A DNA stretch of 64,000 bases from Haliotis rubra. Its lineage: Eukaryota. Each line of letters opens with the position of its first letter. The first letter of the stretch is position 1. Of the stretch, positions 8,667-29,488 are shown in pieces. The DNA lies in the NCBI RefSeq assembly GCF_003918875.1, contig NW_025766625.1, positions 1,178,001 to 1,242,000 on the forward strand, written 5' to 3'. A program made the position numbers and the translations under genes. Below the pieces are notes generated by a model. The model searched no databases and was not told the origin of the DNA. It saw only the letters and a list, made by a program, of their open reading frames with translations.

Positions 8667-8926
8667 GTATTTTTCAAAAAGTGTTTCATGCCTCAGATTG
8701 TTTATAATGACAAACTACAGAAAAATGCTTGATGATAATGTGATATATACAGTGGTAAATTATAACAGCTGTGCAATAAACGTCTGCAAATTTTGAATGA
8801 ATTGTAATTTGGAACTTTCCATAACGTCTTATTTCTTTCCACATGAATACAACTTTACTTAACATCGAAATAGTCCTGTACGTGCAATGTAATTTAAGGT
8901 TTACAATATACCTCATCTACCGGAAT

Positions 8927-9088
8927 GGGGAGGTGGGGAAGCCTAGTGGTTAAAGCGTTCGCTCGTCACATTGTAGACTCGGGTTCGATTCCCCACAAGG
9001 GTACACTGTGTGAAGACCATTTCTGGTGTCCCCCGCCGTGATATTTCTGAAATATTGTTAAATCGGCGTAAAACTAAATTCACACACC
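8927..9088 (+). mobile_element. tRNA-derived SINE family A
   Basis: GCCTAGTGGTTAAAGCG...GGGTTCGATTCCC head and shared body; about 9 copies in the window. Confidence 0.8.
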
Positions 9089-10489
9089 CATCTAGCTGAA
9101 AATTTATCTCTTAGTCCTTTTTTATTTAACTTGTGAAAGGGAACTTCCTTCAATAGTTCCGAATTTTCCTCATCAGTGCACTTAATGAATGTAACTTCTC
9201 AAATAACTTCATTCTTCTATTGAAGATTGTTTTGAAACCATCGATTTCTTGTCCCTGTATTTGCGTAATACGTGTATACTGCTTACTTGTGTTGTTTCAT
9301 TTCTAGCAGCGAGAACTTAGTCCTTCTCACAACAACTAAATTTTGTGTTCCATTTGAATGTCTCTAACTGCTTGTTGTATAATCCGCTCTAATTCTACTT
9401 CATATTTTGATTGTTCTGAGAGTTAAACCTCTGAAATCTTATACCATCTTCTGAATCTGTAATTTTACCATCTCACTTTACATTTCTTCTTAAATTGTAT
9501 TAAACATCAACCTGAGATAAATGTGATTTTTCATTAATAATAATAAATAATAATAATGAATTTTACTAAACATGCAGTCACCACTGTGTAATTTAACCAG
9601 AAACAAAGTTAAGATAACTGGATTATTCCTTTCCTCTTCCAAGTCATAACAGCAAAGATGGGAATTAACCCATTTATGCATAGGGTCTTAGATTTTCATC
9701 AAAATTTGTGAGCTGGCCATGGTTTCTTTTGGCAAGCAATGAAAGGAATGAAGTGTCATTTTACCAGTAAATACATTTTTCCATACTTTGTTACACTGCA
9801 AAAGTGCGTCTCATAAATGGGACAATATGCAGATAATAGTCCAGTAGAATTAGTCTAAAAAATCAGTGAACCTCCCAAAAATTGGTACATAAATGGTTTT
9901 GTGTTTATATCGTTTACAGTAGTATCTGAACATAAGTCCAGAAAATGGTATAAAATCTTGCAAACCATACCACTGAAGTGTACAAAATAGTAAATAATAT
10001 AAATTAAAACTGGAAAACAATTATGACATGAGGTTTGACTTAGATTTTGGACACTCCAGCACACTGGAAACAAGTAAATGAGAGTTATCGCCCCTTTGTT
10101 TACTATAGATGTAGAAGAATGGAAAGGAAAGGTTATATCTTTCATAAAGCTAGATGAGGTTATAGTTAGCCAAATAGATAAAGGGTTAAAAAGACAGCTA
10201 AAAGCTACAATTAGGAGGAGGACTGAGGTGATTCTGCTCCCATAACTAGCCCACAGAACTATATTCACTGCGGTCGTGTAACACTACGAATCTTGGTGAT
10301 AACTGGGACATTCTGTATCAAGATTTAACAGAACTTGAAAAAACATATGCCAGAATGATAGATTAGGAAATATGATACCATTTATATTTTCTATGCTATG
10401 AATTTTAAAACAATTTCAAAAGGTGATTGAAGGATACGTTTGTTCTCTTTTAACTTTAACTGGCAACTACATATTATTATGTGAGCAGA

Positions 10490-10627
10490 GTGAGTGAGTA
10501 TGTTTTTACGCCGCTTTTAGCAATATTCCAGCAGTATCACGACGGGGGACAATAGAAATGGGCTTCACACAATGTGCCCATATGGGGAATCGAACCCGGG
10601 TCTTCGGCATGACCACTAGGCTACCCC
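10490..10627 (-). mobile_element. tRNA-derived SINE family A (partial)
   Basis: Reverse copy flanked by a TGTGAGCAGA duplication. Confidence 0.75.
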
Positions 10628-10798
10628 TGTGAGCAGAATGGAGTAACCGGTAACCCTTGTAAATATTTATAGCATAACTGGTATTTTTTATATCTGACTT
10701 GAAATCTCAGCAACATTTAAAAACGGACTGAAATCTTCGTGAAAAACTTGAAACTGATTCACATACATTAGACATATAACACATATTTTTCTTAAAAC

Positions 10799-11008
10799 TG
10801 GAATATGCCAGCTATGGCGGCGGTCTGTAAATATTCAAGTACGGACCAGACAATCCAGTGATCAACAGCATGAGCATCGATCTACGCAAATGGGATACGA
10901 TGATACGTGTCAACCAAGTCAGCCAGCCTGACCACCCGATCCCATTAGTCGCCTCTTACGACAAGCATGGGTTACTGAAGGTCGATACTAAACTGGATCT
11001 TCATGGGT
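10799..11008 (-). mobile_element. SINE-like interspersed repeat family B
   Basis: Homologous to 42228..42463 and 56114..56337. Confidence 0.7.
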
Positions 11009-12449
11009 GCTGATCAAAGCTCTAGAAAGGTTTTGAAAGCACAAACCAGTATTCTCCTTTTTACTGCTAGTAAACTTTTTTTAAATATTGGTTATTTTTG
11101 AAACTGAAATAACTAATGGACAAATACTTTAAACATTTCAAATACTTAAATTGTTGGTGGTGCATGCTTGTTTATCAGTCATCTTTAACATTTGCTCAGG
11201 AAACGAAAAGACCTCTGACTGACTGAGGGATGACTATATATATATATTCCATGGTATTACATGTCGTTGGGGGTAACTGTCATGAAACCATGTACAATTC
11301 AATGTACCGGTAAGTGAAAATCTATTGCAAGCACCGTTGAATCAAATCACCTCACCCAACCAAGTCTCAAATATTCAAGTTAGTCTGAACACAACCCTTC
11401 AAATTATTGGACTTCTTTTACTCAGAATATCTTCTGTTACTGTTACGTTTTGCTTGGAATTGTCACCAAGCATGATATTCAAAATTAATTCAAATATACA
11501 GACTATGAGACCAAGGGTATCTCTGTCAAGCCCTTGGTGTTCAGGGTCGCCAACGCTATAGTTCAAACCAGCAGATATGATAAATAACATCTTGTTCATT
11601 ATTACAATCTTTAGTTACAGAAGAAGGAGTTAAGTGCAAAGCATCCGAAAATTGGTGTACACGGGGTCAGTTCATTCAGTTTGCAGCAGATAATGTAGAT
11701 TAATCTGAGAACATGGATTAATGCATACCAATGACGTTTTTGCCAATTAGGTGACTGTTTGCCAAAAATGCTGAGGTGTTGATACGCTAAAAGGGATGGG
11801 TTCATATGTCCTGGGTTCATATGTTACGGAGATGCTGAATCAAATTGCTTGATGTCTTGAACAATTCTTGTAGAATATAAAATGAATCACTAGATTGTAT
11901 CATTCTCAGTATTGAGTTATGTTTCATATGAAAGCCAGTTTGGTTGTATTCCATGAAAGCTTTCAAATAAAAAGAGTCAATTTTGAGATTTAAGAGGCTG
12001 ATCTCCCACCACCTAAGCCTAATGTATTACCTAATTTAAGTTCACTTGTCTGCACGGTACTTTGGCGGAAAATAGAGTATGGAAAAAAATGCAAACCATT
12101 TTCATTTTATTTTTCTATTTGAACAACGAAAGTTTTAGACGCATTTTAATGAACTTACATAGTTAAAATAGCACACTTCGCCGAATTGGCAGGGACCTGC
12201 CTTGCCACTGGAAGAGGCCATGCTTAAAGAACTTAAAATCTACAAGTAATATGAATGGTTTAACTACTAACAATTTACTCAGCTTCATTCACGTCTATAC
12301 TGAAAGTTTCTATCTTCATCATAGGAGAGGAATGCTTTTTTGAAGTACCCGTCCCACGACGGATATGCATAAATGGGTTAACCATCGGAACCTTCTACAA
12401 TGTAGTAATGCTCATTCATATTTCTTACGAGTATCTTGGCACATTACAG

Positions 12450-12595
12450 GTTTCCTTGACAAGGTCCGATGCTTCTGCTGTGGAGTTAGGCTGAGGGAAT
12501 GGGATGAAGAAGACGACCCGTGGAGGGAGCATGCTCGCTATAGCCCAAACTGCCGTTTTTTGACAGAAAGATGTCCTACAGATACTACACCACAG
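12450..12595 (+). CDS. IAP-2 exon: second half of BIR2
   Basis: G|FLDKVRCFCCGVRLREWDEEDDPWREHARYSPNC, bounded by AG/GT. Confidence 0.9.
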
Positions 12596-12725
12596 GTAAT
12601 ACTGAGATGCATGTTAAGGAATTACTGAAACCCGAACACCTCTTTTACAAAGCTAGATATGTTGTATAAATATCGAATATTTGTTGAATTATTTTCTTTC
12701 CAATAATATCAAAATCTATGTTTAG

Positions 12726-13245
12726 GTTACTGGATCAGGTTCCAGCGAGATTCATCCTCAAAGAGCAGCTATGAAGCGCAAAAATGAATCCCAGGATAAC
12801 AGACAGTGGAATCGGTGCATACTATGTCTGGATCACCCTGCCAACATAGTATTCCTCCCATGTGGGCATCTGGTAGTTTGTGTCATGTGCAAACAAGTTA
12901 TACAACGTTGCCCAGTTTGCAGCATCCGTATCCGGGGATGTGTTCGCATCTATCCAATGAGTCATCAAAGTTCAAGACACCCGTCCTCGGATCAAAGTTC
13001 AAGACACCCGTCCTCGGATTTCACTCTTCGTGATCCGTCGCCAGAGATCCCTCCGACATCCATAATACCTCCAGATCACCGTCCTACATCTATAATGTCG
13101 TCAGCTTCTAAACCAGAGACTGGAACGAATTACTACGCACCTGATTACCACCTTGAAACTGATAGACTGTCGTCGTTCCAAGGCTGGCCGAGCGAGAGGA
13201 CTCCGACACCGCAGCAACTTGCTATTGCTGGTTTTTACTATACAG
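12726..13245 (+). CDS. IAP-2 exon: internal C3HC4 RING, linker, first half of BIR3
   Basis: CILCLDHPANIVFLPCGHLVVCVMCKQVIQRCPVC runs without a stop into DRLSSFQGWP...LAIAGFYYTG; AG/GT bounded and in phase. Confidence 0.85.
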
Positions 13246-13918
13246 GTACTGTTAAACACGTGTTTAATGTCTTTCACTGTTCAAAATACCAAGCCACAAT
13301 AGTGTACATTTTCAATAGGAAAACTTGTTTTGTAGAATGCTAAGTTCTAAGGATGCGCAAAGAAAGTCTAACAATACTACATGTACAGTGATTTTTTTAG
13401 TATCTGTATAAAAAGTTGCTCGATCGGAATTAATGTCACCTTGAAAGGTATTGGGGTTTCATGAGGATGCATCGTGTTGCTATGGGAGAAACTATGAAAG
13501 TTACACAGATCTTAGGCATTTTCGTGTGACATTTTCAGAAACTTTTCAATATCAAAATGTGATGACATCTATCGTCCAAATGCCATTATAGTGTTTAGTC
13601 TTCTCACTTCTACATTATTACTGTATTACTTATTCTTTATTGGTTTAACTGTAGTGAAAAGTTTAACTTTGTCGAAGAGCTGTGAATCGTAGAAGAGATA
13701 GGATAATCATATTAATGATCTTCAGAAACAAGGCATGACATTAAATATAATTACCAATCAGAAACGCATACAACTCTAAGATGCAACTTATATTGTCTTA
13801 AACGGTGTCCCCATTGTCCCAAAACATGATGAATTAACCATGATAACATTCTACAATGTTGTAATGCTCATTCATATTTGTTCTTAATATCTTGGCACAT
13901 TGACATACCTCCCCGCAG

Positions 13919-14064
13919 GTTTCCTGGACAAGGTCCGATGCTTTTGCTGTGGAGTTAGGCTGAGGAAATTGGATGAAGAAGACGATCCGTGGCGGGAACA
14001 TACTCGCTTTAGCCCAAACTGCCGTTTTTTGGCAGAAAGATCTCCTGCAGATACTACACCACAG
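13919..14064 (+). CDS. IAP-2 exon: second half of BIR3
   Basis: Near-identical paralog of exon 12450..12595. Confidence 0.9.
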
Positions 14065-14190
14065 GTAATACCAACATTCATTCATGTTCATGCAACCCAA
14101 AGAAATCTTTTTCATAAAGCTGTATATGTTATTAAACAGTAAATGTTTGTTGAATACTACTTTTACAAACTCCTCAAAATGTATCTGTAG

Positions 14191-14217
14191 GTTACCGGTT
14201 CAAGTTCCAACGAGATG
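14191..14217 (+). CDS. IAP-2 last exon, 5' part (VTGSSSNEM), interrupted by the LTR element
   Basis: Acceptor at 14190; homologous to the start of exon 12726 (VTGSGSSEI); continues at 23109. Confidence 0.85.
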
Positions 14218-14539
14218 TGTCGTAACTGGCGTTTGGGTGTTAGTAAACCCTACCACCGTTACCTATTAATTATGGTCGTTCCACATTGTTCGGGGAGATG
14301 GTAGCTCTGGCGCTCCACTCGCTTGGTCCGTTGCAGGACGCTAAGTCAAGGAGTGAGGGTTCTGACGACCGTGACTCCTAATTAACCACATAACATTCAT
14401 GTACTGGCACACATACATTCAAAGATAAACGCAACACCAAGTTTATACTCACATAGTTTTTTGAGCAAAACTGCAAATCTAAATACAAATCTGATGTAAT
14501 TCTCTCACGGTTTTGGGGATGCATTTTTACCTTATAACA
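14218..14539 (-). repeat. 3' LTR (322 bp, lacking 420 bp present in the 5' LTR)
   Basis: Matches 22363..22606 joined to 23027..23104, with about 5 substitutions counted by eye. Confidence 0.92.
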
Positions 14540-14548
14540 TCCTCCGCC
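14540..14548 (-). promoter_or_regulatory. Polypurine tract GGCGGAGGA
   Basis: Purine-rich run immediately 5' of the 3' LTR on the - strand. Confidence 0.7.
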
Positions 14549-16580
14549 TGTGGACAAGAGCTGCCCACAGCTCGGATACATTAAACATGAGCACAGGTCC
14601 GATATGTTAAAGTTAAACACATTGAACACCGTCGAAGCAAAACAGGATCGGTAATTTCTGAGAGGAAATGATAACCCATTTCAAACTTTCGGAATATTCG
14701 GAAAAAGTCGAGGATACTGTACCTTAAAAACGAGCATGCCAAGGAATAAGAGAATGATCCTATGTTACTTCGGGTAACCACAAAGCATATACATCATATA
14801 TATTATGAGATGAAAACACAACAATGAATTAAAGTCAATATTAAATGTGAAAATGTCTTCAATATGGCCAAACAATGGCACCACCATTCACAAAAGTTCA
14901 TAAGTCTCTGGTCCCATCGAATAAACTGGCAAACGTCTACTGGAAAAGTCATGTTCTGAATGTCACTTGATATACACTGAACGCTGTTTACTCTGTGCGA
15001 GGCCACAACAAAATTAATGTCTGAACACAGGGCCGTGTATCACACAGCATAGTTAATTGGCTTGGTCTTCAAAGTGAGGAGACGAAATGTTCTGCACACT
15101 GCGTGAGTGAGCTCTGTAGTTTCACTGATGATGTACCCTGTTGCTTTCGCAACTTGTAGGGGGGCATCGTAGAGGTCTTGCAGTGTCTATCGTCAATACT
15201 GCGCCTTCGTGGGCGGTGTTCAGCGTCGCAACCTGGAACTTGCGATAGCGTTCGCCGGTAACAGCAAGTGTGGAGCCAGATAATCGATGTGGCGTGGACC
15301 AGACGACAGCGAGGGAGGAGCTTATCTGTTCTCCCGTCTGAATGGGGTCCGGCCATTAATCTACAACACTTGAAACAAGTGTTAAACCACGGCGAATATA
15401 ATTAGTATTATAATATACATTAGATACGACAGCAATACATGTTAAAACATGACACGCTCAAATAAATGGCAACCTGTGTACAGGTCACAGTAGACAATTA
15501 CAGCATTCTTGACTGCCGACTGCGTGCCGAATAACAATTTGAGTCCATAATGTTGCATGAATATTCTCTGATACCTATGTAGCATGGCATCAATAAATAG
15601 TAATCAAATGTTATTTTAACCATGGACGACATCTGTAATACCTGTAATAGGTTAAATAGGTGCAAGTTACTCACAACATTCAGTAAATGCTTTGCAGTTT
15701 AAAACAACAAGAACGAACAACACCGATAAATAAGGGATGGACTGAAAGTATACATTGAAACACGGATAAGAATATTTCCTAACAAGTAACATTGAAGAGA
15801 ATCCACAGTAGAATTATGTAATATAAATAACTTCCATCTATCCGTAATGTATGAGACATCAATTCCTAATACAGGTATTGTCTCTATAGAAAAGTTATAC
15901 AATATTGTCGTAAGAATGAGTATTAATATATGACTGAACATTCTCTTTGTGACTTTGTAATTATATAGGGGTTAAGAGCACGATGATCTCTACTGTTAAA
16001 ACATTTAACAAAATATTACTATAACTTTAAAACATGGAGTATTTATCGAAAACTATCGCTTTTCCAATTCTTAACCATTGTGTAGACTCAAATGGTCAAT
16101 GTACCCAAATGACAAGTGTTCTAACACTGAAAAATGACTGGTCGTTAAAAGTTTGTTGAACTCCATTATCAAGATTACGTGCTGATTTCGTCCTCTGCAC
16201 AATGCGTTTCCACGGTGACAGTCCACCATAAGATAACGGTTGAATTCGTCATCGACATAAATACACTTTGCTGCGACCGTTATATCTGGCATTTGGCGGA
16301 GAACAAAAGCTTTCTATTGCTAATAGGATAACCGGGGTCTGCCGTCTGATTTAAGGGGACGGTTGTAATGCCATAATGTTATAAAACCATAAAAACACTT
16401 GCTATAGTTGGAAGGAATTGTTTGAATTGAAACGTTTTTCCAGACATATATATATATATATATAGATGGGGTTTGAATTACCAAAATTGGGGCTATCGAA
16501 CAGTAAATAATATGTAAAGAAAACTCGTTGAATACGAAAGTTAGTCAAAAATTTGCAGCTGACAACGTGAGGTCACGGGT

Positions 16581-18704
16581 TCAGAGATAAAATTGTGGCA
16601 GAACAATCTCATGACAAGAATTCGTCAAATGTAAAACTAAGGTCGTAACCGGTCGATTGAACTTTTTTACTCTGCGAAGAAGTAAAATAAACACCAGAAA
16701 TACTGTCGATATGATGAGGAAAACATCCATTGAAATAGTTGATTTAATCAAAGACATAAAAGATGGCTGGGGATAGTTCGGAGGGGTGGTTGTGTGGTAT
16801 GCTTTCCAATCTATCAAACCATTAGTCGGGGAACCTGCTGTAAGTAACGTTAAAGCAAAAAATAGGCGTCTAACTTTTAACCATAAATACATAACCAGTA
16901 TAAATAGAAATAAGGACAAACCTGCGGCAAAACTAGCCGTTAAATGTTAGGGCTTGGTTAAGGACCCATCCAAAGCAGACGATGGAAGGGAATTCATCCA
17001 ATTATCTTCAATTAAATTATCCGAAATCACTTGTGCCTTTTTCATACGCTTGGAAATAAGGCGTAAATCAACTTGAAATTTATTTTCCTTTTTCCGAATG
17101 TCATCGAAAACTTTATAATCGATTAATAAATGTGGAATTTTGAACGCAGAATCTTCTAAAAGAAGCCGTAAAGTTTCGTAAGGTTTCAGTACGGATGAAT
17201 TGAAAAATTCCGATAAGAGTAGAAGATTGGGTGGATACAATTTTGAAGTTGTTGACTTTTTTTCACAGTGATGAATTCTCATGTCTATGTCGAATTCATC
17301 CAGTTTCAACGCACAGTGGCAAGGAATTTTAAATATACAAATCTGACAAGCTGGACGCTTCTCAATGCGACCCTTGCAAGTTAATATAATAGTTTTTATG
17401 CCACTGAGCAAAACAAGGCCTGGTTCGATTTCGAGAGCCATCGAACGAAGCCCTTTTAATCTAAATTTAACATCACACAAGGATTTAATTCCTGGTGCGT
17501 CCTGATCAAGCAGAGCAAGTGCGCAGGTGAGAACCAGTGTTTGGTTTGGCGCTAAGAAAAATTGGGCAATGTTTTTTGTGTTCACCAAAACATGTTTGAA
17601 AATCCCTGGTAGAAAATTCAATATACTGATCTTTCGCTTCCGAAACTGCCAAATAATCAGGTAAATTCATAACCTGAGTGACGTGTGAACTTGATTGATT
17701 AATTGGTAGGCCAAATGAATTGATTCGATATACCTCGAGGAGAGTTGAATGAGTCTGGAAAGGAACAATGAGTGAAATTAAAATTGAATCTCCAGTTCTA
17801 GAACAATGAACAGTGCGTTCCCGATAATAATAGCCTGGATCCTTGTGAGCAACGTGAAACAACGGATATTCTGCGTTTAGACGTTTTTGAATCATATTTA
17901 GGGCCTTCTTTACTTCCGTAACTGGGAGCAAAGATGGACTCAAACGTTGGTTAACTAATTGCTGTATTCCAAGATACATTTCATCAATTTCCTGTCGAAT
18001 AGTCGTCAAAAATGTCAGACGATCTAGCAAAATTTTCATAGAAATGAAAATACTTTTTTCTACGTCTTGTACCTGTTCGGCGACCTGAGAAATGTCCCTA
18101 TGATTCGTTTCAATACCTGTTAGAGAGGAAGAAATACGGTCATTGGTTTTAGCTATAAATGACGACATCTGACGAACTTGCACTTGTACAACGCGAGAAG
18201 TATTAGTTACATGCATTGATAATCGTTTGACATACTGCGCCAGCCGTTCTACATCTTCGACTGTAGCAGTACCAAAAATTGAACGACTAATGGATCCGAT
18301 AAATGGAAGGATTGCCCGTCTCGTGCGTGAATCCTTTTGAAAAGTGTTAACATGCGGAATTAATATTTTAATGTCCTTACTGACATTCGTCCAATACACG
18401 AGCAATTCTTGTTCCGCTTTCTTTATATATCCATCTATAGCATTCACAGAATAACAATGTAACGCGTGCGTTTTACAAAACTGTTGGTAATCTGGTCTAT
18501 TACCCATTTCAGACAAATCTGGCAATTTATACTTGAATACATGGATCCATTTATTTTGTGAAATGTCGATACGTGACGTATGGATAAATACAACTCCCCA
18601 TGGAAGTCGTAATTCTGTATGGACAGAATTAACTTGATTCTGGATGATGACAAGCGCCATCAGCGTGAACAAGACCCAAACTGGTCGAAGGAGACTCCTG
18701 GATT
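16581..18704 (-). pseudogene. env: env: class I viral fusion glycoprotein (gypsy-Env/baculovirus-F-like); frameshift near 17530 and an in-frame TAA at 16947..16949 before the TM segment
   Basis: Signal-peptide-like SRSLLRPVWVLFTLMALVIIQ, furin site RTRR followed by fusion peptide AILPFIGSISRSIFGTAT, heptad repeat, QRLSPSLL motif, Cys-rich region, TM GLSLFLFILVMYLWL and a second TM VFLIISTVFLVFILLL. Confidence 0.85.
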
Positions 18705-19830
18705 CTAAAATTCAAAGAACGGGATTATGAACATAAAATAGAAACTTGAAATGAAATCATATACGTCATCAATATTCTTAGGAAAAGTTTCCATCACTGT
18801 AAAACTGCATTCATATGACGTCTTCTCCTGTCAATTGAAACTGACTGTATTAAACATATGATAACAATTGTCACATGCAGGTAATGGTAGTTTCACACTA
18901 GTATTCGTGCGAATAAACAACATTCAACAATAGTAGTAAATTCTCATCAACCTGTTTCATCAGAAGATTTCTCACCACGGAACATATATGTATTGGTACG
19001 GTATAACCATTGAACACTGAATTCTCTTGACTTCCTTTCGAGTCATGTAACTGTAATTCATTGTTCGTCATCGTATTTCATTGAATACCATTGTATTTGT
19101 ATATATATCGTATCATCATCGTCAGATCTCTTTGGATCGTAGTTCATTTCTTTTTCTCGTATATACACGCATAGCGAAACGCTTTGTAATGGTCCGCGAA
19201 TATGTACAACGTCCCTTTTGGACAGCGCGACCTGTAACCTTCCCGTAGAAGTAGTATGAATATGCATAACCTGACCCAAACATTTTGGTCAGTAACCCGG
19301 GAATGTATTCTTCAAGTAGTAATACGAAATGTGACCCAAACCTTTGCAGCGTTTGGTCACTAACCCGTGAATATGAATATATTTTTCAATATCAACCAAC
19401 ACGTGACTGTATGCAGTTGAAGTATTCTGAATATATTCAACAAGACATTTGACAAGAAACAATACACAGTTCAACATATATGCACACTTCTATTTCCTTG
19501 TAACCTGGTGACAATTGCATCATGTAACATCGTAAAGGATGATCTATAGCGTGGGCTAGCACCATGCGTATAGCATCATATAGTGATAATCCTGAAATAA
19601 AACACATGCAAAAATCAATTTGTGGGTGATCAGTCCTCAGCATGATATTTGCAGTGTCGTAACTAAAAAGGTAACGCTTTATAACAATTTGTCAGAAACA
19701 ATATTTCAAATATTTTGTTAAAAATTCTAACGCTTTCGTTTCTCATTTAACGACTGCAGTATCATATAATCATAGGTCTCCTTCAGGGATTTTGGATTCG
19801 TGATTATCTGTAACCACATGTAAAGTGCAG

Positions 19831-21063
19831 TTACCTCATGTAAAGTGCAGTTCTCCTAGTAAATCCTGTAGTATTTCTTTCCACTGAGTATTCTACGCTC
19901 GCATCCATTTTGCTATACAAAGTATTCCTGTATATCCAAGGTGACTTTTTATGCCTGTCCGATGTTAACGGCTTGGAAATGGGGGTTATGATGTCTGTAT
20001 CCGTACCAGATTTATGCAATTTATTAATTTGATTGTAATGACCGACAACTGGAAATGGGTTAGTTGGCCTGTGTCTGTGGTTGACAAACCGCCTAAGCCG
20101 TTTAGCATGACCAGGAACTTTCAGTCGTTTACGATTGTCATAACGTGGTCGTTTGCACGTACACGGTGGCAATTGATTGGACGCGTCATATTGTCTGTGT
20201 GATGTGGAGTAATCTCCTGTCGGGACAGCGGTTACTCTAAGTGAGCTGTCATCATACAAATCTGATGACAAATCTGTTGTGATTGGAATCGATATTTGGT
20301 TGTTGTTATCCGACTGGGGAAGACCACTGTCTGAATTCGGTGAACATTCTGAATACGGAAAGCTTGACAGAATCTCTGTGGGATGCCAGTGTTTGCCCGG
20401 TCGATACTGAACTGTAAAACCTAGGCAGTGTTCCTTTTTTGATGGGGGAGCAATTGTGACATTTTGCCGCGAGCAAGCAGGAATGTGTTCTGACTCCGTG
20501 GGGATTGATTGTTTACCAGCAACAGGTGGTAATAAAGTACCATTCGCCCTCATTGGAACAACTGTTGAACCATTCTGAATAGCCAAAGTATAAGATTGAA
20601 AATTCATGACAGTCTTTTGACTTATCAAGAAATCTAATCCTAAAATCATGGGAGACTCAAAATTTGCAACAACTAGAAAACATTGTTCTGTTTGAAAATC
20701 ACCAATAGTGATGGAAAGTACAACTTGTCCTAATACTGGCATTATATTTTGACTTATCCCTTGAATAGATGGCACATCTGACTTTTCAATAGGGATTTTT
20801 TTCCATAGGCCTGAATCATTGAAAACTTCTAGGCTTAAAACACTAGAACCAGCGCCTGAATCTACAATTGTTGGAACTAACTTTTCTCCCAAAACAACAT
20901 GAATTGTATTAAGCCTGTTGTCGCTTTCAAATGTAGTCTGCGAAAAGTTAGATTTTGGCTGGTTGTAACGAGGAGAATTACAAGCTTGTGGTTTCAAATA
21001 AGTATGGTCAACCGTTTGTTCAGCACAATGGGAAAATTTCCTGCGTGGTCTTGACTGTAATTG
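19831..21063 (-). CDS. pro: Retropepsin (aspartic protease) ORF in frame with gag; remnant pol with RNase H and integrase C-terminal stubs only
   Basis: IVDSGAGSSVL active site and ILGLDFL motif, FTVQYRPGK (RNase H end), VPGHAKRLRRF (integrase C-terminus). No YxDD or DDE core. Confidence 0.85.
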   Translation of the reverse strand, partial: QLQSRPRRKFSHCAEQTVDHTYLKPQACNSPRYNQPKSNFSQTTFESDNRLNTIHVVLGEKLVPTIVDSGAGSSVLSLEVFNDSGLWKKIPIEKSDVPSIQGISQNIMPVLGQVVLSITIGDFQTEQCFLVVANFESPMILGLDFLISQKTVMNFQSYTLAIQNGSTVVPMRANGTLLPPVAGKQSIPTESEHIPACSRQNVTIAPPSKKEHCLGFTVQYRPGKHWHPTEILSSFPYSECSPNSDSGLPQSDNNNQISIPITTDLSSDLYDDSSLRVTAVPTGDYSTSHRQYDASNQLPPCTCKRPRYDNRKRLKVPGHAKRLRRFVNHRHRPTNPFPVVGHYNQINKLHKSGTDTDIITPISKPLTSDRHKKSPWIYRNTLYSKMDASVEYSVERNTTGFTRRTALYMR

Positions 21064-22185
21064 CTATCTGCTAGTTCGGTAACCTGACTGGTACCTAGCC
21101 CTGCATACTCGTTGAAAATGTCCTATCTTGTGACAAAAATGGCTCTGAATATTCCGTGCGGGACAAAAATCAGAATGAGAAAAATCGTACTCACCACCGC
21201 ATCTGTAACACTGCCTTCCACGGGCCATGTTGTCTCCTTGAATGGGGTCTGTCCATTGAGGAGTGGGCTGCCACGGTTGATCTGTATACCTGGATTGTCT
21301 GGGGAACTGGGGACGTTGATTCTGTCGGGACTCATAAGTATTGATCTGTGACGATACCGGAGCGAGTTTTGCCGAAAGTTCAACAATCTGTAATCTCAGC
21401 GTATCTATTGCTAGCATAACGTTTGTACTGTCTTCAGACTGGGGAATGACCGATCTAGCCAGTCGCGCAAATGAAACTGCCTCGTTTAGCACATTTGGTT
21501 GTTTCATTAACACATGTCGCCTGGTATTGTCATCCAGTCCCCTAACGAAGGCGTCCATTACATCTGCATCTGTTTTTCCTAACAGGCTAGCCGTCTCAGT
21601 CAAGTCCGCCAAATAAGTATCTATAGATTCTGTAGAGGATAGCTTTCGACTGACAAAAGTTTCCAAAAGGGCCCAACGGTCAGTAGGATGGACATACTTG
21701 TCCTTGAACAATTTCTCAATCTCATCAAAACGGACTATTTCTTCCTCTGCCGATTCTATCAAATCTTTGTACCATAGATACGCCGCGTCCTTTAAAAACA
21801 GTGGGAAAACTTCAATTTTCTGTGCATCAGTCCACCTTTTAAAGTTATCAAAATGAGCAAAACGGTCAAGCCACTCGGCAGAATGAAACGTGTCCCTACC
21901 TGTGAAATGTTCTGGCATTAAAGTGGAATCGCCCATATTGAAGTCAGGTGCAGAATAAGAACTATTGGTAGATGACAAATCTAAAGAGGAAAATGAGAAT
22001 TCTAAATCCTCCTGAGAAAGAGATAGGGAGAGGTCATTGGGAGCAGATGGAGGTTGAGACGTTGACGTGGGTTGTTGTATTATGCCAAGTCGGGTTGGAT
22101 TAGTAAAAATGTTAGAAGTGATGGGACGAGATTGGACCAGACTGTCATAGGACGTAGATGAATCTGAATCATTTCCACGAGGCAT
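21064..22185 (-). CDS. gag: Gag (retrotransposon capsid domain plus Zn knuckles)
   Basis: PEHFTG...WLDRF...FPLFLKDAAYLWY capsid motif, FVRGL, and CYRCG..H...C plus a degenerate SHFCHKIGHFQRVC knuckle. Confidence 0.92.
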   Translation of the reverse strand: MPRGNDSDSSTSYDSLVQSRPITSNIFTNPTRLGIIQQPTSTSQPPSAPNDLSLSLSQEDLEFSFSSLDLSSTNSSYSAPDFNMGDSTLMPEHFTGRDTFHSAEWLDRFAHFDNFKRWTDAQKIEVFPLFLKDAAYLWYKDLIESAEEEIVRFDEIEKLFKDKYVHPTDRWALLETFVSRKLSSTESIDTYLADLTETASLLGKTDADVMDAFVRGLDDNTRRHVLMKQPNVLNEAVSFARLARSVIPQSEDSTNVMLAIDTLRLQIVELSAKLAPVSSQINTYESRQNQRPQFPRQSRYTDQPWQPTPQWTDPIQGDNMARGRQCYRCGGEYDFSHSDFCPARNIQSHFCHKIGHFQRVCRARYQSGYRTSR

Positions 22186-22346
22186 TACAAAAATTCAAAA
22201 TATCCTGAGGGAAAACTGCAGATAACATATCCCAGCCGCGAAAAGGGAACCTACCGTCAAACGTCAATGCAAGGGAACAAAAGGGTAGGAACGACCATAA
22301 GGAAAACAGCGAAATGGATCGTCTTAAACATTTTGTTCAAGAAGAA

Positions 22347-22362
22347 CCCGCAGACTCCACCA
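22347..22362 (-). promoter_or_regulatory. Primer binding site TGGTGGAGTCTGCGGG (tRNA-Ala-like)
   Basis: Starts with TGG directly after the 5' LTR and resembles the complement of the eukaryotic tRNA-Ala 3' end. Confidence 0.7.
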
Positions 22363-23104
22363 TGTCGTAACTGGCGTTTGGGTGTTAGTAAACCCTACCA
22401 CCGTTACCTATTAATTATGGTCGTTTCACATTGTTCGGGGAGATGGTAGCTCTGGCGCTCCACTCGCTTGGTCCGTTGCAGGACGCTAAGTCAAGGAGTG
22501 AGGGTTCTGACGACCGTGACTCCTAATTAACCACATAACATTCATGTACTGGCACACATACATTCAAAGATAAACGCAACCCCAAGTTTACACTCACATA
22601 GTTTTTACTCAGTCTCAGTCCATCTCTCTAACTACAACTTCAACATCAGACAAGGCAGGTTCGTACCACACGGGGCAACTGAGTGGCGTGAACTGGCTTC
22701 CGTCACTAAAAAGCGCGCACCACTCGCTCAGTGCCCAACCTGTCTTTTTATATGGTTCGAGCCTGGCCTGATCTTGATCACATGTTTGAACTAATCATTT
22801 TGATTCGGTTAGCCTGTATCCGACCTTGCACTCATGAATATTACGATTGGAAAAGTACCGGTAAGAATCGTTCGGTTACTCATCCCTTTGTTGTTTGTTT
22901 CAATGTAAGATTAATCTGTTATGTCTTTCAACAGAATGTGTTCTGTCTCTCTTTCCATAGCCTACGGCTAAACGCCATTCTATGGAAACTTTCCGTCTCC
23001 ATACCGTGCCTAACCGTTATGACTCATGAGCAAAACTGCAAATCTAAATACGAATCTGATGTAATTCTCTCACGGTTTGGGGGATGCATTTTTACCTTAT
23101 AACA
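22363..23104 (-). repeat. 5' LTR (742 bp) with TATAAAAA at 22752..22745
   Basis: TGTTATAAG...TTACGACA on the - strand, homologous to the 3' LTR. Confidence 0.92.
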
Positions 23105-23105
23105 G

Positions 23106-23351
23106 ATGCAACCTCAAAGAGCAACTACGAAACGCGACGAAGAAATCCATGGCAGAAGAGAGTCCAGATTGTGTAAGATCTGTCTGGAGGACCCCGCCAA
23201 CATCGTCTTCCTCCCCTGTGGACACCTGGTTGCCTGTGCCTTGTGTGCCCCAGCTCTGGAGCGTTGTCCAATCTGCAGAAAACACATCCAGGGAACTGCC
23301 CGTGCCTGTAAAGCCGATATGGCGTCTCGACAGAAACGTACTAACTGTTAA
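23106..23351 (+). CDS. IAP-2 last exon, 3' part: C-terminal C3HC4 RING separated by the LTR insertion
   Basis: CKICLEDPANIVFLPCGHLVACALCAPALERCPIC; joins 14191..14217 in frame when the element and one TSD are removed. Confidence 0.9.
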   Translation: MQPQRATTKRDEEIHGRRESRLCKICLEDPANIVFLPCGHLVACALCAPALERCPICRKHIQGTARACKADMASRQKRTNC

Positions 23352-23789
23352 TAACTGACACTGTAACTGAGAGTCCTCATGTCATAGAGCATAAATAACA
23401 TTCGAATCTTGCTTTTTGTCAAAATTAAGATGACAAAATATGCCATCGTAGCCGTAGGAATTATTTCAGATATCGTTATTAACAGTGCCCAACCTCCACA
23501 AACAAACGTGTTTTTACAGCGAGAAGCAACCTCTTTCCATTTCTATTCTTAAATCTGGTCCAATAAGTTTTAGACTCGACGAGAGAAGGGCTTGAGAATT
23601 GTTAAAATAACGAAAATATGTCACAATGAATAACGCGACATATATCGATGTTTTAGAAAGGGCGGCAACTTCACAAGTTACACTCTAGGATTCGATACTG
23701 AAGTGATAGAAGACAATCAGTTAAATGACAACGCTTTTTAATTCACATTGTTGTTATAATTGCAAAACAATTCTACACACTGAATGGTA

Positions 23790-24012
23790 GTATACATGTA
23801 TATACATGTATGAATTAAAATGTGAAATGGTGTTGACATGTATATACATTTATGAATTAAAATGTTAAATTGTGTTGACATGTGTATACATGCATAAATT
23901 ATGTTAAATGTTAAATGGTGTTGACATGTATATACATGTATAAATTAAAATGTAAAATGGTGTTCACATGTATATACATGTATGAATTAAAATGTTAAAT
24001 GGCGTTGACATG
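23790..24012. repeat. About 40-bp AT-rich tandem repeat (about 5 copies)
   Basis: Unit TATACATGTATGAATTAAAATGTTAAATGGTGTTGACATG. Confidence 0.85.
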
Positions 24013-24450
24013 CCGTATCACTTTCCTGGCGCAGAAGTAAATCCTATTGGTTTCACGAACAGAAATACCGAGACATTTGATGTGTCATTTTTCACTACAG
24101 TGGGAACGATTGACACAGCCGTCTGAGATTCGCTGTGGAGAGTTGCGTCCCTTGAGCAGGCCAGACACCCCTGACCGCGGGTTCGATTCCCGGATCGCCG
24201 CAGTTATGTTTCTAGTTTTGTCTGTATCAAACCTGTAGTAGTGATTTTTGCCCGAGTGGTAAACGTCTAAGACCTACATCACATGTCATTGCTCAAACCG
24301 TTAGCTGACACGCCATGATATATGTGGAACAAGTTAAAGGTGGCATCGTTCATACATACTTGAAAAGATGAAATATACATATTATACACATACAACTGCT
24401 TGAATGTACTGGCCAATAGTATGCTTGTTCCATTGTGTTTCTTTGGATGT

Positions 24451-25029: not shown

Positions 25030-25680
25030 ATGTATGGCATATCGACAGAGCATACTTTCTGTCTGACATATCAACTGAGCATACCTTTTGTGTCTGGTAT
25101 ACACACAGTTCAAACTGTGTCTGGTACATCATCAGAGCATAATTCCTGTGTCGTGCATACCAACAGAACACGCAGTATCTGGCATATTAACATATGTCTT
25201 CGGTGACTGTCATATCAACAGAGCATACCTTCTATGTCTGGCATATCAACAGAGCATACTGGCATGTCCACGGAGCAAATCTCCTGTGTCTAGCATATTA
25301 ACAGAGCATACTTTCTGTGTTCTGGCTTATCAACAGAGTACGTTGTAACTGGCATATACACAAACCCATACTCACTGTGTCTGGCATATCAACAGAGCAT
25401 TTGTTCTGTGACTGGCATATCAACAGAGCATATGTTTTGTCTGGCATGTCCACAGAGCATCCTTCCAGTGTCTGGAATATCAACAGAGCATTGTTTCAGT
25501 GTCTGGCATATCAACAGAGCATTCTTCCAGTGTCTGGCATATCAACGGGGCATTCTTCCAGTATCTGGCATATCAACAGAGCATAGTTTCAGTGTCTGGC
25601 ATATCAACAGAGCATACTTTTAGCGTTTGGCATATCAGCAGATCGCTCTTTCTGTATCTTGTATATCAATAGAGCTCTAC
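25030..25680. repeat. About 31-bp minisatellite (CATATCAACAGAGCAT...TGTCTGG)
   Basis: Directly visible; same family as 38200..40920. Confidence 0.9.
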
Positions 25681-27730: not shown

Positions 27731-28026
27731 GTAAGGTTGTGTGTTTAGTTCTCACGCCACCTCAACACGTCGGCCTGTAGTTACTGGGTTCTGACTATCA
27801 CACACGCAAAACAAATGGCGACATCGTTATGGTAGGGTCTACAGCAGGTATTGAAACAATTCTGCCAATTCTGCCCCACCCCCACCCCACCCCCACCACA
27901 CACACACTCACTCCTGGATTTACAATATTTCTGGTTTTACATTGACTTCAGGACAGATTATACTGTCTGCATAAACCTTCACATACATACATTTACCAAA
28001 TTAATTTTCTCTTGCAGGAAACAACG

Positions 28027-29488
28027 ATGAGGATAAAAAGTCATACACTTATGTATATTTATATCCGATGCCTTTATGTAATACCACCAAAAAGCAAATA
28101 TGTTTTTGAGTTGAAGTATGGAAATATTATCACCAAAAAAGTCGGTGGTGGACACTTGCCCGACATTGTTGTTAATATCACCTGTTTTGATAAGCTCTCA
28201 AGTTATTTTACAAAATCACATAAAAATATGGCGTTTCCGATGTTTTATATGCCGGAGCTAAGAGCGTTCCAGCACATTAGTATCGTGGTATATACAAACC
28301 CATCGATATCACTAAATGGGAATTTTGAAGCTCTGGTTGCTAGACGTGGCGCCACCCTGCAGGAAATCATGGTTTATGAAGCTCTTAGATTGAAATCCTT
28401 CCTTGGAGTAGACACAGCAACTGTATCCACTATACATCTGGCGGCAGCAGGGTTCTATGCAACAGAGCGTTCAGGAGAGATCAGGTGCTTCAGCTGTGGC
28501 ATCCGCCAAAGGATAGGACCACAGGCCCCAGAACGTCACCAAACTGATTGTCGACACAGAAATGGGTTACCTTGTGGAAATATCACCTTTGCTGATTGTC
28601 CCTTGGCTTCTGAGTGGAATATTATTCGAAACCTTCCCAGATACCCGACCACAGATATCGATCTTCATCAACCACAGATGCGACCAACCGCAAGGCAACT
28701 ACCTGGAAACGTCGCTAACAATGCATATGAACCCCGTCAGGCTAACCACGCAGTGCCTGATTACCCTATAGAAGCTAGTCCGGCAGCGCTCGGAGTAAGG
28801 TTGAGAGAGGGACGCCAGGCTCCGCAAAAGACCCCTGGAGAAGATCCTAAACGAGAAGGTACAGTTTGTACGTGGTCGTTATAATCCGATGTAAGACTTA
28901 TTTTATGTGAATGTGTTGGATAAACATTTTTTTCGAGTCTTTTTCGAGCGAAAATGAACAAAACATAAGAAATATATGTGGCGATATTTTGGAGGTAAAA
29001 CACAACTGTGACACCTTTAATAATAATGTGTGAATCCACCCTGTTGCAGGCTCCCCCGGCTTCGTTGGGCCCCGCGAGTTGGATGAAGATCAAGGCAGAT
29101 TGTTTAGAGATATTAACAGGGGATATAATTTCCCCGTCGGCGACAGATCTGGCACTTTCACCTCCTTACAGGTAACATGAATTTAGCTGAATGAAATCGT
29201 ACTGATTGTAACACATTCACATGAGACGTTTGGGTATAAAGCTAACTATACTATTTTTCTGGAAATTGTATTTTGCAGGTGACGCAGCTGGGTAACACCC
29301 CAGAGGCTTTCGGCAATGCTTTTAGTGGACATGGACTGGAACACCCGCAGTTTATGGAATCGAGCTTGTGCAGGATCTGTCGGGAGAACCCCCGCAGTAT
29401 CCACTTCCACCCCTGCGGTCATCTAGTGGCCGGTACCTTCAGAACACCTTCAGAACGTTGCCCAGTTTGCAGGCAACATTTGGCATAA
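28027..29488 (+). CDS. IAP-3: divergent IAP (atypical BIR1, degenerate BIR2, degenerate RING). Exons 28027..28858, 29050..29171, 29279..29488
   Basis: RLKSF...LAAAGFYATE...CFSC; same exon phases as IAP-2; RING CRIC...PCGHLVAGTFRTPSERCPVC lacks one Cys pair. Confidence 0.8.

What the first reader, a model, noticed from the sequence alone, without database searches (positions are those of the whole stretch)
14218..23104. Retrovirus-like gag-pro-env LTR element with no reverse transcriptase or integrase
Seen: both LTRs, PBS, PPT, a 4-bp TSD, intact gag and protease, and a full-length fusion-type env, but no RT or integrase core anywhere in 8.9 kb. The shared LTR parts differ by only about 5/322 nt, so the insertion is fairly young. 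Common non-autonomous LTR elements lose env or all ORFs; this one keeps the particle-forming and entry genes and drops the enzymes. Inference: a helper-dependent, potentially enveloped satellite retroelement that borrows RT/IN from an autonomous relative.
Basis: partly seen in the sequence, partly recalled or inferred. Interest (0 to 1): 0.88.

Follow-up and report, generated by a model that had tools for sequence, protein, structure and literature searches.

The report
Pol-deleted env-carrying abalone LTR retroelement
This is an 8.9-kb retrovirus-like mobile element in an abalone genome that has lost its copying enzymes but keeps its coat, protease and (now broken) envelope genes; a second copy with the same losses elsewhere shows it spread in this stripped form, as a dependent passenger of a known element family.

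Summary
The LTR element is real. It lies on the minus strand at 14218-23104, with conserved TG..CA ends, a PBS, a PPT, a perfect 4-bp TSD and a paralogous empty site. Gag and protease are open. RT, RNase H, the integrase zinc finger and the integrase core are absent: pol has two large deletions, leaving 1.3 kb of about 4.2 kb.

Two details of the finding are wrong. The env is not intact: it has one frameshift and one in-frame stop. The 3' LTR has lost 420 nt.

The element belongs to a Haliotis family of chromodomain-bearing Ty3/gypsy elements with an F-type (paramyxovirus/baculovirus F-like) env. This "ancient errantivirus" kind is already described in molluscs. Relatives with complete pol and identical LTRs exist in H. 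cracherodii and H. asinina.

A second copy, on an H. rubra contig at an unrelated locus, is colinear over 8.6 kb and lacks the same two pol stretches. LTRs differ by 1.55% and 0.27% within the copies but by 3.4-3.7% between them. The deletions therefore predate two separate integrations, so the deleted form was mobilised in trans.

An adapted, enveloped "satellite" is not shown. Env is broken in both copies, I found only two copies, and no helper from the same genome was available. I rate it a new member of a known kind, of moderate interest.

The parts
14218..23104 (-). Whole LTR retroelement (8887 nt), sense strand = minus
   Evidence: LTR pair, TSD, PBS, PPT. Colinear with the H. rubra copy L002 9090-18353.
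23105..23108 (.). Target-site duplication, copy next to the 5' LTR (GATG on the plus strand)
   Evidence: The family makes perfect 4-bp TSDs in 5 of 6 related loci.
14214..14217 (.). Target-site duplication, copy next to the 3' LTR (GATG on the plus strand)
22363..23104 (-). 5' LTR, 742 nt, full length for the family
22345..22362 (-). Primer-binding site (TGGTGGAG..TGCGGG), starting directly after the 5' LTR. Conserved in all 7 copies; tRNA type not determined.
21064..22185 (-). gag, open, 373 aa: capsid (Retrotrans_gag / Ty3_capsid) and zinc knuckle. It ends in UAG followed by CAA-UUA (a readthrough context), and pol follows in the same frame.
   Evidence: 87% identical to H. rubra LOC124269371.
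21189..21195 (-). Predicted splice donor G|GTGAGT inside the gag zinc-knuckle codons
   Evidence: Homologous to the donor used by NCBI gene models P0001 and P0002. Kept in 7 of 7 copies.
19730..21063 (-). pol remnant, given as one part. The protease domain is open (DSG). RT, RNase H, the integrase zinc finger and the integrase core are absent through 2 large deletions. The integrase C-terminus and chromodomain remnant are in another frame.
18705..18710 (-). Predicted splice acceptor TTTTAG| just upstream of the env signal peptide
16581..18704 (-). env, given as one part. It is an F-type class I fusion glycoprotein gene: signal peptide, RTRR furin-type site followed by a fusion peptide, long helix, Cys-rich region, membrane anchor. 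It is broken 2 times (1 frameshift, 1 in-frame stop), both private to this copy.
14554..16580 (-). About 2 kb of post-env non-coding region. It is present in relatives, with patchy conservation and no conserved ORF.
14540..14553 (-). Polypurine tract region (CCACAGGCGGAGGA) abutting the 3' LTR, identical in all 7 copies
14218..14539 (-). 3' LTR, 322 nt. It has one private internal deletion of 420 nt relative to the 5' LTR and to both LTRs of the H. rubra copy.
13834..14217 (+). Left half of the interrupted host IAP repeat unit (paralog of 12378-12751)
23105..23351 (+). Right half of the interrupted host IAP unit: RING-finger coding stretch (paralog of 12749-12938)

Best explanation
The region is a non-autonomous, internally deleted member of a Haliotis family of Ty3/gypsy (Metaviridae) elements. 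This family is the 'ancient errantivirus' kind, with a chromodomain integrase and an F-type envelope gene.

Shown:
- The element has all cis signals of the family: LTR ends, PBS, PPT and a 4-bp TSD.
- It has an open gag and an open protease, read through a UAG in a CAA-UUA context.
- Two deletions have removed RT, RNase H, and the integrase zinc finger and catalytic core.
- The same two deletions are in a second, non-allelic copy in H. rubra.
- Each copy's LTR pair is younger than the split between the copies.

Inferred:
- The deletions arose once in an ancestral copy or RNA.
- The deleted genome was then transcribed, packaged, reverse-transcribed and integrated at least twice, using RT and integrase supplied in trans by pol-complete relatives that recognise the same PBS, PPT and LTR ends.
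- After integration into an IAP gene paralog, this copy decayed neutrally: two env breaks, a 420-nt loss in the 3' LTR and 1.55% LTR divergence. As it stands it cannot make a membrane-anchored envelope protein.
For: Anatomy and insertion:
- LTRs, PBS, PPT and TSD.
- Paralogous empty site.
- Gag and protease domains.

Loss of pol:
- 0% coverage of the RT, RNase H, H2C2 and rve domains, against 100% coverage of the protease and chromodomain, using the open 1403-aa pol of L004 as the measure.

Pol-complete relatives:
- H. cracherodii L004: pol 1403 aa open, LTRs 100% identical.
- H. asinina L005: pol 1401 aa open, LTRs 100% identical.
- H. rufescens L001 and L003 also carry full pol.

Second deleted copy (L002):
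- 8881 of 8887 element bases covered, in one 8.7-kb alignment with 3.3% substitutions and a largest indel of 42 nt.
- Flanks are unrelated.
- The missing reference intervals are identical in size and ends against L003, L001 and L004.
- LTR distances are 1.55% and 0.27% within copies and 3.4-3.7% between copies.

Decay after insertion:
- The env lesions here are private, while the env, gag and protease-ORF terminal stops are shared with L002.

Env identity:
- Pfam Baculo_F on the relative's env (2.1e-7) and on a family representative.
- A profile hit to solved 'fusion protein' 9w4d at 1.3e-14.
- An AlphaFold model (pLDDT 80.5) that matches post-fusion RSV, hPIV3 and NDV F.

Literature:
- A chromodomain-bearing errantivirus clade in Mollusca, Annelida and Cnidaria with F-type env is described in PMC13524379.
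Against: - Only two deleted copies could be found. The tools give no eukaryote-wide DNA search, so copy number is unknown.
- The H. rubra copy has no TSD. It may be a recombinant between copies or an assembly mosaic, which weakens it as a clean independent insertion.
- The source species of the window is not identified. None of its ORFs is in the protein collection.
- No pol-complete helper from the same genome was seen. The known pol-complete relatives are only about 74% identical in DNA.
- Deletion junctions cannot be placed to the base against such distant references. 59-979 nt remain unaligned at the junctions, depending on the reference and the junction.
Confidence: 0.75

Rival explanations
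1. One-off decay: a pol-complete element inserted here and lost RT and IN afterwards by deletions private to this locus.
For: This copy has clearly decayed after insertion: a private 420-nt LTR deletion and two private env breaks.
Against: The same two pol deletions, with the same ends, are present in a copy at an unrelated locus in H. rubra.
Confidence: 0.03
2. DNA-level spread: the deletions arose in one integrated copy and reached the other by ectopic recombination, gene conversion or segmental duplication, without any retrotransposition of the deleted form.
For: The H. rubra copy lacks a TSD, as expected for a product of recombination between copies. Divergence between the two copies is uneven along the element.
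Against: - The window copy has a perfect TSD and a clean empty-site paralog.
- The flanks of the two copies are unrelated.
- Each copy's own LTRs are much closer to each other than to the other copy's LTRs, as expected from separate reverse-transcription events.
- Conversion would have to cover both deletions and the roughly 3 kb around them while leaving the LTRs distinct.
Confidence: 0.1
3. Adapted satellite: the deleted lineage is a long-lived parasite of the autonomous elements that keeps its own gag, protease and env under selection and travels in enveloped particles built from its own proteins.
For: - Between the two deleted copies, gag has dN/dS 0.29 (binomial p 1e-5) and the first env piece 0.38 (p 0.01).
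- Between-copy divergence (3.3-3.7%) exceeds what post-insertion decay predicts (about 0.9%), so the deleted lineage existed for some time.
- The env and gag reading frames end at shared stops, and the env breaks are private.
- Both deletions lie inside the predicted env intron, so the spliced env message is untouched.
Against: - The other four coding pieces give dN/dS of 1.0-1.9 at dS about 0.02, which is neutral.
- dS is six times higher in gag than elsewhere, so the gag signal may come from exchange with other lineages, or from a variable low-complexity N-terminus, rather than from selection in the deleted lineage.
- Env is broken in every copy seen, including pol-complete ones with identical LTRs. 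This suggests env is dispensable for recent spread of the family.
- Only two copies are known.
Confidence: 0.12
4. Host-domesticated gag (and env) gene rather than a mobile element.
For: NCBI annotates gag or gag-env gene models at related loci in H. rubra, H. rufescens, H. asinina and H. cracherodii. Gag is open.
Against: - Complete LTRs, PBS, PPT and TSD are present.
- The related loci are non-orthologous, each with its own TSD.
- Env is broken.
- The gene models are chimeric: one runs into a host exon beyond the LTR and another into a non-conserved post-env stretch.
Confidence: 0.02

Closest known systems
Chromodomain-bearing 'ancient errantiviruses' of Mollusca, Annelida and Cnidaria with F-type env (env-carrying Ty3/gypsy; eLife 2026, PMC13524379)
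   Same: The family to which this copy belongs has gag, PR-RT-RNase H-IN with a C-terminal chromodomain, and a downstream env with a furin-type site, a fusion peptide and a paramyxovirus/baculovirus F-like fold.
   Different: This copy and its H. rubra twin lack RT, RNase H and the integrase zinc finger and core. The paper catalogues intact elements and holds neither 'non-autonomous' nor 'lacking pol' in its main text. Whether this exact Haliotis family is in its catalogue could not be checked, because no supplement is held.
EAV-HP endogenous retrovirus of chicken
   Same: It is an LTR element that lacks the whole pol gene yet keeps gag and env sequence, and it occurs as insertions at different loci, so it was copied with enzymes supplied in trans (PMC3554524).
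   Different: EAV-HP is a vertebrate alpharetrovirus-related ERV (Retroviridae) with part of gag and env also missing. The element here is in Metaviridae, keeps the protease, and has complete gag and env coding regions.
Gag-retaining deletion derivatives mobilised in trans: mouse IAP I-delta-1 and ETn/MusD, barley BARE2 (named from my own knowledge, not tested here)
   Same: They have the same logic: intact cis signals, loss of enzymatic functions, and spread at the expense of an autonomous relative.
   Different: None of these carries an envelope gene. ETn has no coding capacity at all.
LARD / TRIM non-autonomous LTR elements
   Same: LTR-bounded, with PBS and PPT, and lacking RT and IN.
   Different: They are defined by having no coding capacity. 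This element has open gag and protease and a near-complete env.
Drosophila errantiviruses (gypsy, ZAM)
   Same: Ty3/gypsy with an F-type env expressed from a spliced subgenomic RNA, and a 4-bp TSD (the Drosophila splicing and TSD are from my own knowledge; the env type is in PMC13524379).
   Different: The Drosophila elements have no chromodomain. Here the conserved donor lies deep in gag (zinc-knuckle codons) and keeps gag and env in one frame, and gag-pol uses in-frame UAG readthrough signals.

Membership tests
LTR retrotransposon, Ty3/gypsy (Metaviridae) | Two direct LTRs with TG..CA ends, PBS after the 5' LTR, PPT before the 3' LTR, short TSD | tested here: met
LTR retrotransposon, Ty3/gypsy (Metaviridae) | Gag with Ty3-type capsid and zinc knuckle | tested here: met
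   Pfam Retrotrans_gag 1.6e-10, Ty3_capsid 5.9e-9
LTR retrotransposon, Ty3/gypsy (Metaviridae) | Pol with domain order PR-RT-RNase H-IN | tested here: not met
   In this copy only PR and fragments remain. The order is met in relatives L004 and L005, so membership is by descent and not by present content.
Errantivirus-like (env-carrying Ty3/gypsy, F-type) | Third gene downstream of pol encoding a class I F-type fusion glycoprotein (signal peptide, furin-type site, fusion peptide, membrane anchor) | tested here: met
   - Sequence features.
- Baculo_F on a relative.
- PDB profile hit at 1.3e-14.
- Fold match to RSV, hPIV3 and NDV F.
The gene is broken 2 times in this copy. The window's own pieces give no Pfam hit; homology is through 79%-identical relatives.
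Errantivirus-like (env-carrying Ty3/gypsy, F-type) | Env expressed from a spliced subgenomic RNA | tested here: inconclusive
   Donor and acceptor consensus sites are conserved in 6 of 7 copies and are used by two NCBI gene models. No transcript data were available here.
Chromodomain-bearing clade (chromovirus-like integrase) | Chromodomain at the C-terminus of integrase | tested here: inconclusive
   Present and open in relatives (Pfam Chromo about 1e-10). In the window the homologous DNA is kept, but out of frame with the protease.
Non-autonomous deletion derivative mobilised in trans (EAV-HP / IAP I-delta-1 / BARE2 type) | Lacks RT and/or IN but keeps all cis-acting signals of the autonomous family | tested here: met
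Non-autonomous deletion derivative mobilised in trans (EAV-HP / IAP I-delta-1 / BARE2 type) | Several non-allelic copies sharing the same deletion junctions, integrated separately | tested here: met
   Two copies, which is the minimum. They have the same missing intervals, unrelated flanks, and LTRs closer within copies than between them. One of the two lacks a TSD.
Non-autonomous deletion derivative mobilised in trans (EAV-HP / IAP I-delta-1 / BARE2 type) | An autonomous partner present in the same genome | not testable with these tools
   There is no DNA search of eukaryote genomes. Pol-complete relatives were seen only in other Haliotis species.
LARD / TRIM | No protein-coding capacity between the LTRs | tested here: not met
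   Open gag (373 aa) and protease ORF

The most novel reading that the evidence does not exclude
The deleted form may be a stable, selected 'satellite errantivirus' lineage. On this reading it makes its own capsid, protease and F-type envelope, the last from a conserved in-frame gag-to-env spliced message that the deletions leave untouched, and it takes only RT and integrase from pol-complete relatives. It would then be the retroelement counterpart of a satellite virus in a mollusc.
Probability: 0.12. Interest if true: 0.7.

Novelty: new member of a known kind. Interest (0 to 1): 0.38.

Why it matters
The finding shows that an env-carrying Ty3/gypsy family of molluscs has produced a pol-less derivative that was copied in trans. 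This gives a concrete case for studying how such elements parasitise one another outside insects and vertebrates.

It also gives a dated, clean insertion into a member of the expanded IAP (apoptosis-inhibitor) gene cluster of abalone.

Two family features seen on the way may interest people who work on retroelement gene expression more than the deletion itself does. One is an in-frame gag-UAG-pol boundary with a readthrough context. The other is a conserved donor inside gag that keeps gag and env in one frame, where env has no start codon of its own.

Tried and rejected
- A protein search with the junction-spanning protease ORF found nothing of 213-679 aa. This says nothing about unannotated copies.
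- Pfam on the window's own env pieces gave no hit. The env type had to be shown through relatives, a family profile and a fold search.
- Rfam and tRNA scans of the region found nothing. The 420-nt LTR block is native LTR sequence, not a nested SINE as I first suspected.
- A post-env ORF used by one NCBI model (P0006) is not conserved and carries stops in relatives, so I rejected it as a gene.
- A test for introgression in the more diverged gag segments was inconclusive. Both deleted copies are equally far from the outgroups.
- I considered a base-level test of whether the deletions are bounded by splice-like signals. I dropped it because the pol-complete references are too distant: 59-979 nt stay unaligned at the junctions, depending on the reference and the junction.
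- The supplement of PMC13524379 is not held.
- I did not scan the viral or prokaryote collections for relatives. They are barred or pointless for an animal virus-like element.

Full report
**1. The observation**

The repeat finder and a self-BLAST show one long direct-repeat pair in the region: 14218-14539 and 22363-23104. The shared 322 nt differ at 5 positions. There is no further copy in the 64-kb window. All sizeable ORFs lie on the minus strand, so the element reads right to left and 22363-23104 is the 5' LTR.

On that strand:
- The LTRs begin TGTTATAAGG and end TTACGACA.
- TGGTGGAGTCTGCGGG (the PBS) follows the 5' LTR directly.
- CCACAGGCGGAGGA (the PPT) precedes the 3' LTR.
- Both ends are flanked by CATC.

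The window is a cluster of IAP-type genes with BIR and RING domains. A neighbouring uninterrupted repeat unit (12378-12938) matches the left flank (13834-14216) and the right flank (23105-23294) end to end, overlapping only by the duplicated bases. That serves as a paralogous empty site. The insertion and its bounds are therefore certain.

**2. The genes**

Gag (21064-22185) is open at 373 aa. It matches Pfam Retrotrans_gag (1.6e-10) and Ty3_capsid (5.9e-9) and has a zinc knuckle.

It ends in UAG followed by CAA-UUA, and the next open stretch continues in the same frame with only that stop between. UAG-CAR-YYA is the classical type-I readthrough context (PMC3542737). The same nine bases stand at the gag/pol boundary of L002, L003, L004 and L005.

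The following ORF holds an aspartic protease (DSG; four Pfam protease families, best 7e-6) and then runs on for about 250 residues with no domain.

Env does not come as one ORF. Its coding region (16581-18704) is read in three open pieces, which means one frameshift and one in-frame stop, both upstream of the membrane anchor. The finding's "intact ... full-length env" is therefore only half right.

**3. Host and family**

The first env piece finds H. rufescens LOC125380964 (79% identity) and an H. asinina protein. Gag finds H. rubra LOC124269371 (87%), plus H. asinina, H. rufescens and H. cracherodii proteins. The window thus comes from an abalone, either H. rubra or a close relative.

Fetching the encoding loci gave six related elements. 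Their LTRs are 688-796 nt. Five of the six have perfect 4-bp TSDs.

| Locus | Species | Pol | LTRs |
|---|---|---|---|
| L004 | H. cracherodii | one open pol of 1403 aa | 100% identical |
| L005 | H. asinina | one open pol of 1401 aa | 100% identical |

In both, the domain order is PR, RVT_1, RNase H, Integrase_H2C2, rve, (SH3), Chromo. L001 and L003 (H. rufescens) have the same content with breaks, and L001 also has one nested insertion.

The L001 env piece matches Pfam Baculo_F above threshold (2.1e-7). [quoted passage not shown]

**4. The env type, tested with the window's own protein**

- A full-library HMMER search with env piece 1 gave 1497 representative clusters at E<=1e-3. They are typically 780-850 aa, with the query matching their first ~390 residues. 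Where named, they come from bivalves such as Mya and Argopecten.
- A profile of 65 of them hits two solved "fusion protein" entries, 9w4d and 9w4c, at 1.3e-14 and 5.9e-13.
- The AlphaFold model of the window piece (mean pLDDT 80.5, pTM 0.67) finds post-fusion RSV F, hPIV3 F and NDV F first. Foldseek E is down to 4.9e-8, with probability 1.0 and TM about 0.44.
- The sequence shows RTRR followed by a hydrophobic AILPFIGS-type peptide, a 75-residue helix, a Cys-rich part and a membrane anchor followed by KVRR.

So "fusion-type env" is right: it is an F-type class I fusogen.

**5. What is missing**

I used the open L004 pol as the measure. Coverage by window DNA is as follows.

| Pol part | Share matched by window DNA |
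|---|---|
| Protease | 100% |
| RT | 0% |
| RT-RNase H connection | 0% |
| RNase H | 0% |
| RNase H-IN linker | 62% |
| Integrase H2C2 | 0% |
| rve core | 0% |
| Post-core integrase | 36% |
| Chromodomain | 100%, in another frame |

The outer bounds of the pol-homologous DNA are 21063-19730, which is 1.33 kb where relatives have 4.2 kb. Against every pol-complete reference the window lacks two large stretches of pol. A third missing stretch is the 3' LTR loss. "No RT or integrase core anywhere" is confirmed.

**6. The decisive comparison**

L002 (H. rubra QXJH01001442.1) holds a 9264-nt copy at 9090-18353.
- It covers 8881 of the 8887 element bases.
- One alignment spans 8.7 kb with 285 substitutions (3.3%) and a largest indel of 42 nt.
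- Its flanks share nothing with the window's flanks except short dispersed repeats.
- It lacks the same two pol stretches. The sizes are identical, and the interval ends agree to 0-1 nt against L003 and L001. Against L004 they agree for one deletion, while one end of the other differs by 146 nt, in a stretch that does not align cleanly to that reference.
- Its per-domain coverage is the same.
- Both its LTRs are full length, so the short 3' LTR in the window is a private 420-nt loss.

LTR distances are 1.55% within the window copy, 0.27% within L002, and 3.4-3.7% between the copies. LTRs are identical at integration. Each copy was therefore integrated on its own after the two lines split, and both already carried the deletions.

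RT and integrase must have come from another element (inference). The PBS core, PPT and LTR ends are the same as in the pol-complete members, which fits that.

Caveats:
- There are only two copies.
- L002 has no TSD (GGAG against AATT), whereas all six other copies have one. It may be a recombinant between two such copies or an assembly mosaic.
- The helper in the same genome is unseen.

**7. Decay and selection**

The window's two env breaks are absent from L002 and from L001, L003 and L004. The terminal stops of env, gag and the protease ORF are shared with L002. The common ancestor of the two deleted copies probably had open gag, protease and env.

dN/dS was computed piece by piece and never across a frameshift.

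| Comparison | Piece | dN/dS | dS |
|---|---|---|---|
| Window vs pol-complete relatives | all pieces | 0.11-0.45 | - |
| Window vs L002 | gag | 0.29 (p 1e-5) | 0.135 |
| Window vs L002 | env piece 1 | 0.38 (p 0.01) | 0.068 |
| Window vs L002 | protease, remnant, env pieces 2 and 3 | 1.0-1.9 | about 0.02 |

The first row shows long-term constraint on all three genes in the family.

Divergence between the two copies is uneven: 6.5-7.4% over the leader and the first two-thirds of gag, 5.8% in one env segment, and 1.2-3.8% elsewhere. Both copies are equally far from the outgroups in those segments. I therefore cannot tell exchange with other lineages from local variability. The gag signal is compatible with selection inside the deleted lineage but does not prove it.

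Env is broken, in different ways, in all seven copies, including L004 and L005 with identical LTRs and open pol. That argues that recent spread of the family did not need env.

**8. Expression signals seen on the way**

Two NCBI models (P0001 in H. rufescens, P0002 in H. asinina) join gag to env at the same point.
- The donor G|GTGAGT sits in the zinc-knuckle codons.
- The acceptor TTTTAG| sits just before the env signal peptide.
- Both are kept in 6 of 7 copies, the window included, and in all six the gag frame runs on into the env frame.
- In L001 and L004 env has no start codon of its own before the signal peptide.

Both pol deletions lie inside this predicted intron, which is 2490 nt here against 5.2-5.5 kb in relatives without nested insertions.

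I checked only the phase of the junction. I built no joined product and searched with none; that step is left out.

**9. Verdict**

The corrections are the strand, the broken env and the unequal LTRs.

The interpretation "helper-dependent" is supported. "Enveloped satellite that keeps particle and entry genes" is not shown.

The kind is known. Trans-mobilised deletion derivatives of LTR elements are common, and pol-less gag/env-bearing ERVs exist (EAV-HP, PMC3554524). The autonomous family is a described type (PMC13524379). I file this as a new member of a known kind, with moderate interest.

**10. Conduct**

- align_proteins printed a consensus line by itself.
Those coordinates bound the breaks.

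Noticed in passing
window 1796-4060, 12771-13343, 23106-23351, 28012-28884, 54986-55768; flanks 13834-14217 and 23105-23351: The window is a cluster of IAP-type genes or fragments with BIR and RING domains. The element sits antisense inside one tandem IAP unit, just before its RING-coding stretch. A paralogous uninterrupted unit lies at 12378-12938.
   Followed up: partly
window 21189-21195 and 18705-18710; same sites in L001, L002, L003, L004, L006: A consensus splice donor inside the gag zinc-knuckle codons and an acceptor just before the env signal peptide are conserved across species. They keep gag and env in one frame. Env has no start codon of its own in L001 and L004, which suggests a gag-env fusion precursor with an internal signal peptide. 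Two NCBI models use this junction.
   Followed up: partly
window 21055-21066; L002, L003, L004, L005 gag ends: Gag ends in UAG followed by CAA-UUA, the type-I readthrough context known from plant viruses, and pol follows in the same frame. This points to gag-pol expression by stop-codon readthrough rather than frameshifting.
   Followed up: partly
L001-L006 and the window, env regions: Env is broken in all seven copies examined, in different ways. This includes L004 and L005, which have 100% identical LTRs and an open pol of 1401-1403 aa. Either env is dispensable for recent spread or some breaks are assembly errors.
   Followed up: partly
L002 9086-9089 and 18354-18357: The H. rubra deleted copy has no target-site duplication (GGAG against AATT), while the six other copies have perfect 4-bp duplications. 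The five bases before its 5' LTR equal the end of the PPT. It may be a recombinant between copies or an assembly mosaic.
   Followed up: partly
window 21500-22300 and 17500-17900 compared with L002: Divergence between the two deleted copies is 2-3 times higher in the leader and first two-thirds of gag, and in one env segment, than elsewhere. Synonymous divergence in gag is six times that of the rest. The cause (exchange between lineages or local variability) is not settled.
   Followed up: partly
L001, inside the element 8744-23630: The H. rufescens relative carries one nested insertion of about 2.6 kb in pol. It consists of a minus-strand ORF with a weak endonuclease/exonuclease/phosphatase match (a likely non-LTR retrotransposon fragment) and an array of 172-nt tandem repeats.
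   Followed up: no
L001 gene 10001-26503; L004 gene 10001-19819: The NCBI gene models at related loci are chimeric. P0001 ends in a host exon beyond the 3' LTR. P0006 splices gag to a post-env stretch that is not conserved and carries stops in relatives.
   Followed up: yes
window 47199-48431 and 63064-63897; 23752-24054; 25059-25492: The window holds Tc1/mariner-type transposase remnants (HTH and DDE_3 matches), a 42-nt tandem repeat array directly downstream of the interrupted IAP unit, and a second array of about 30-nt repeats.
   Followed up: no
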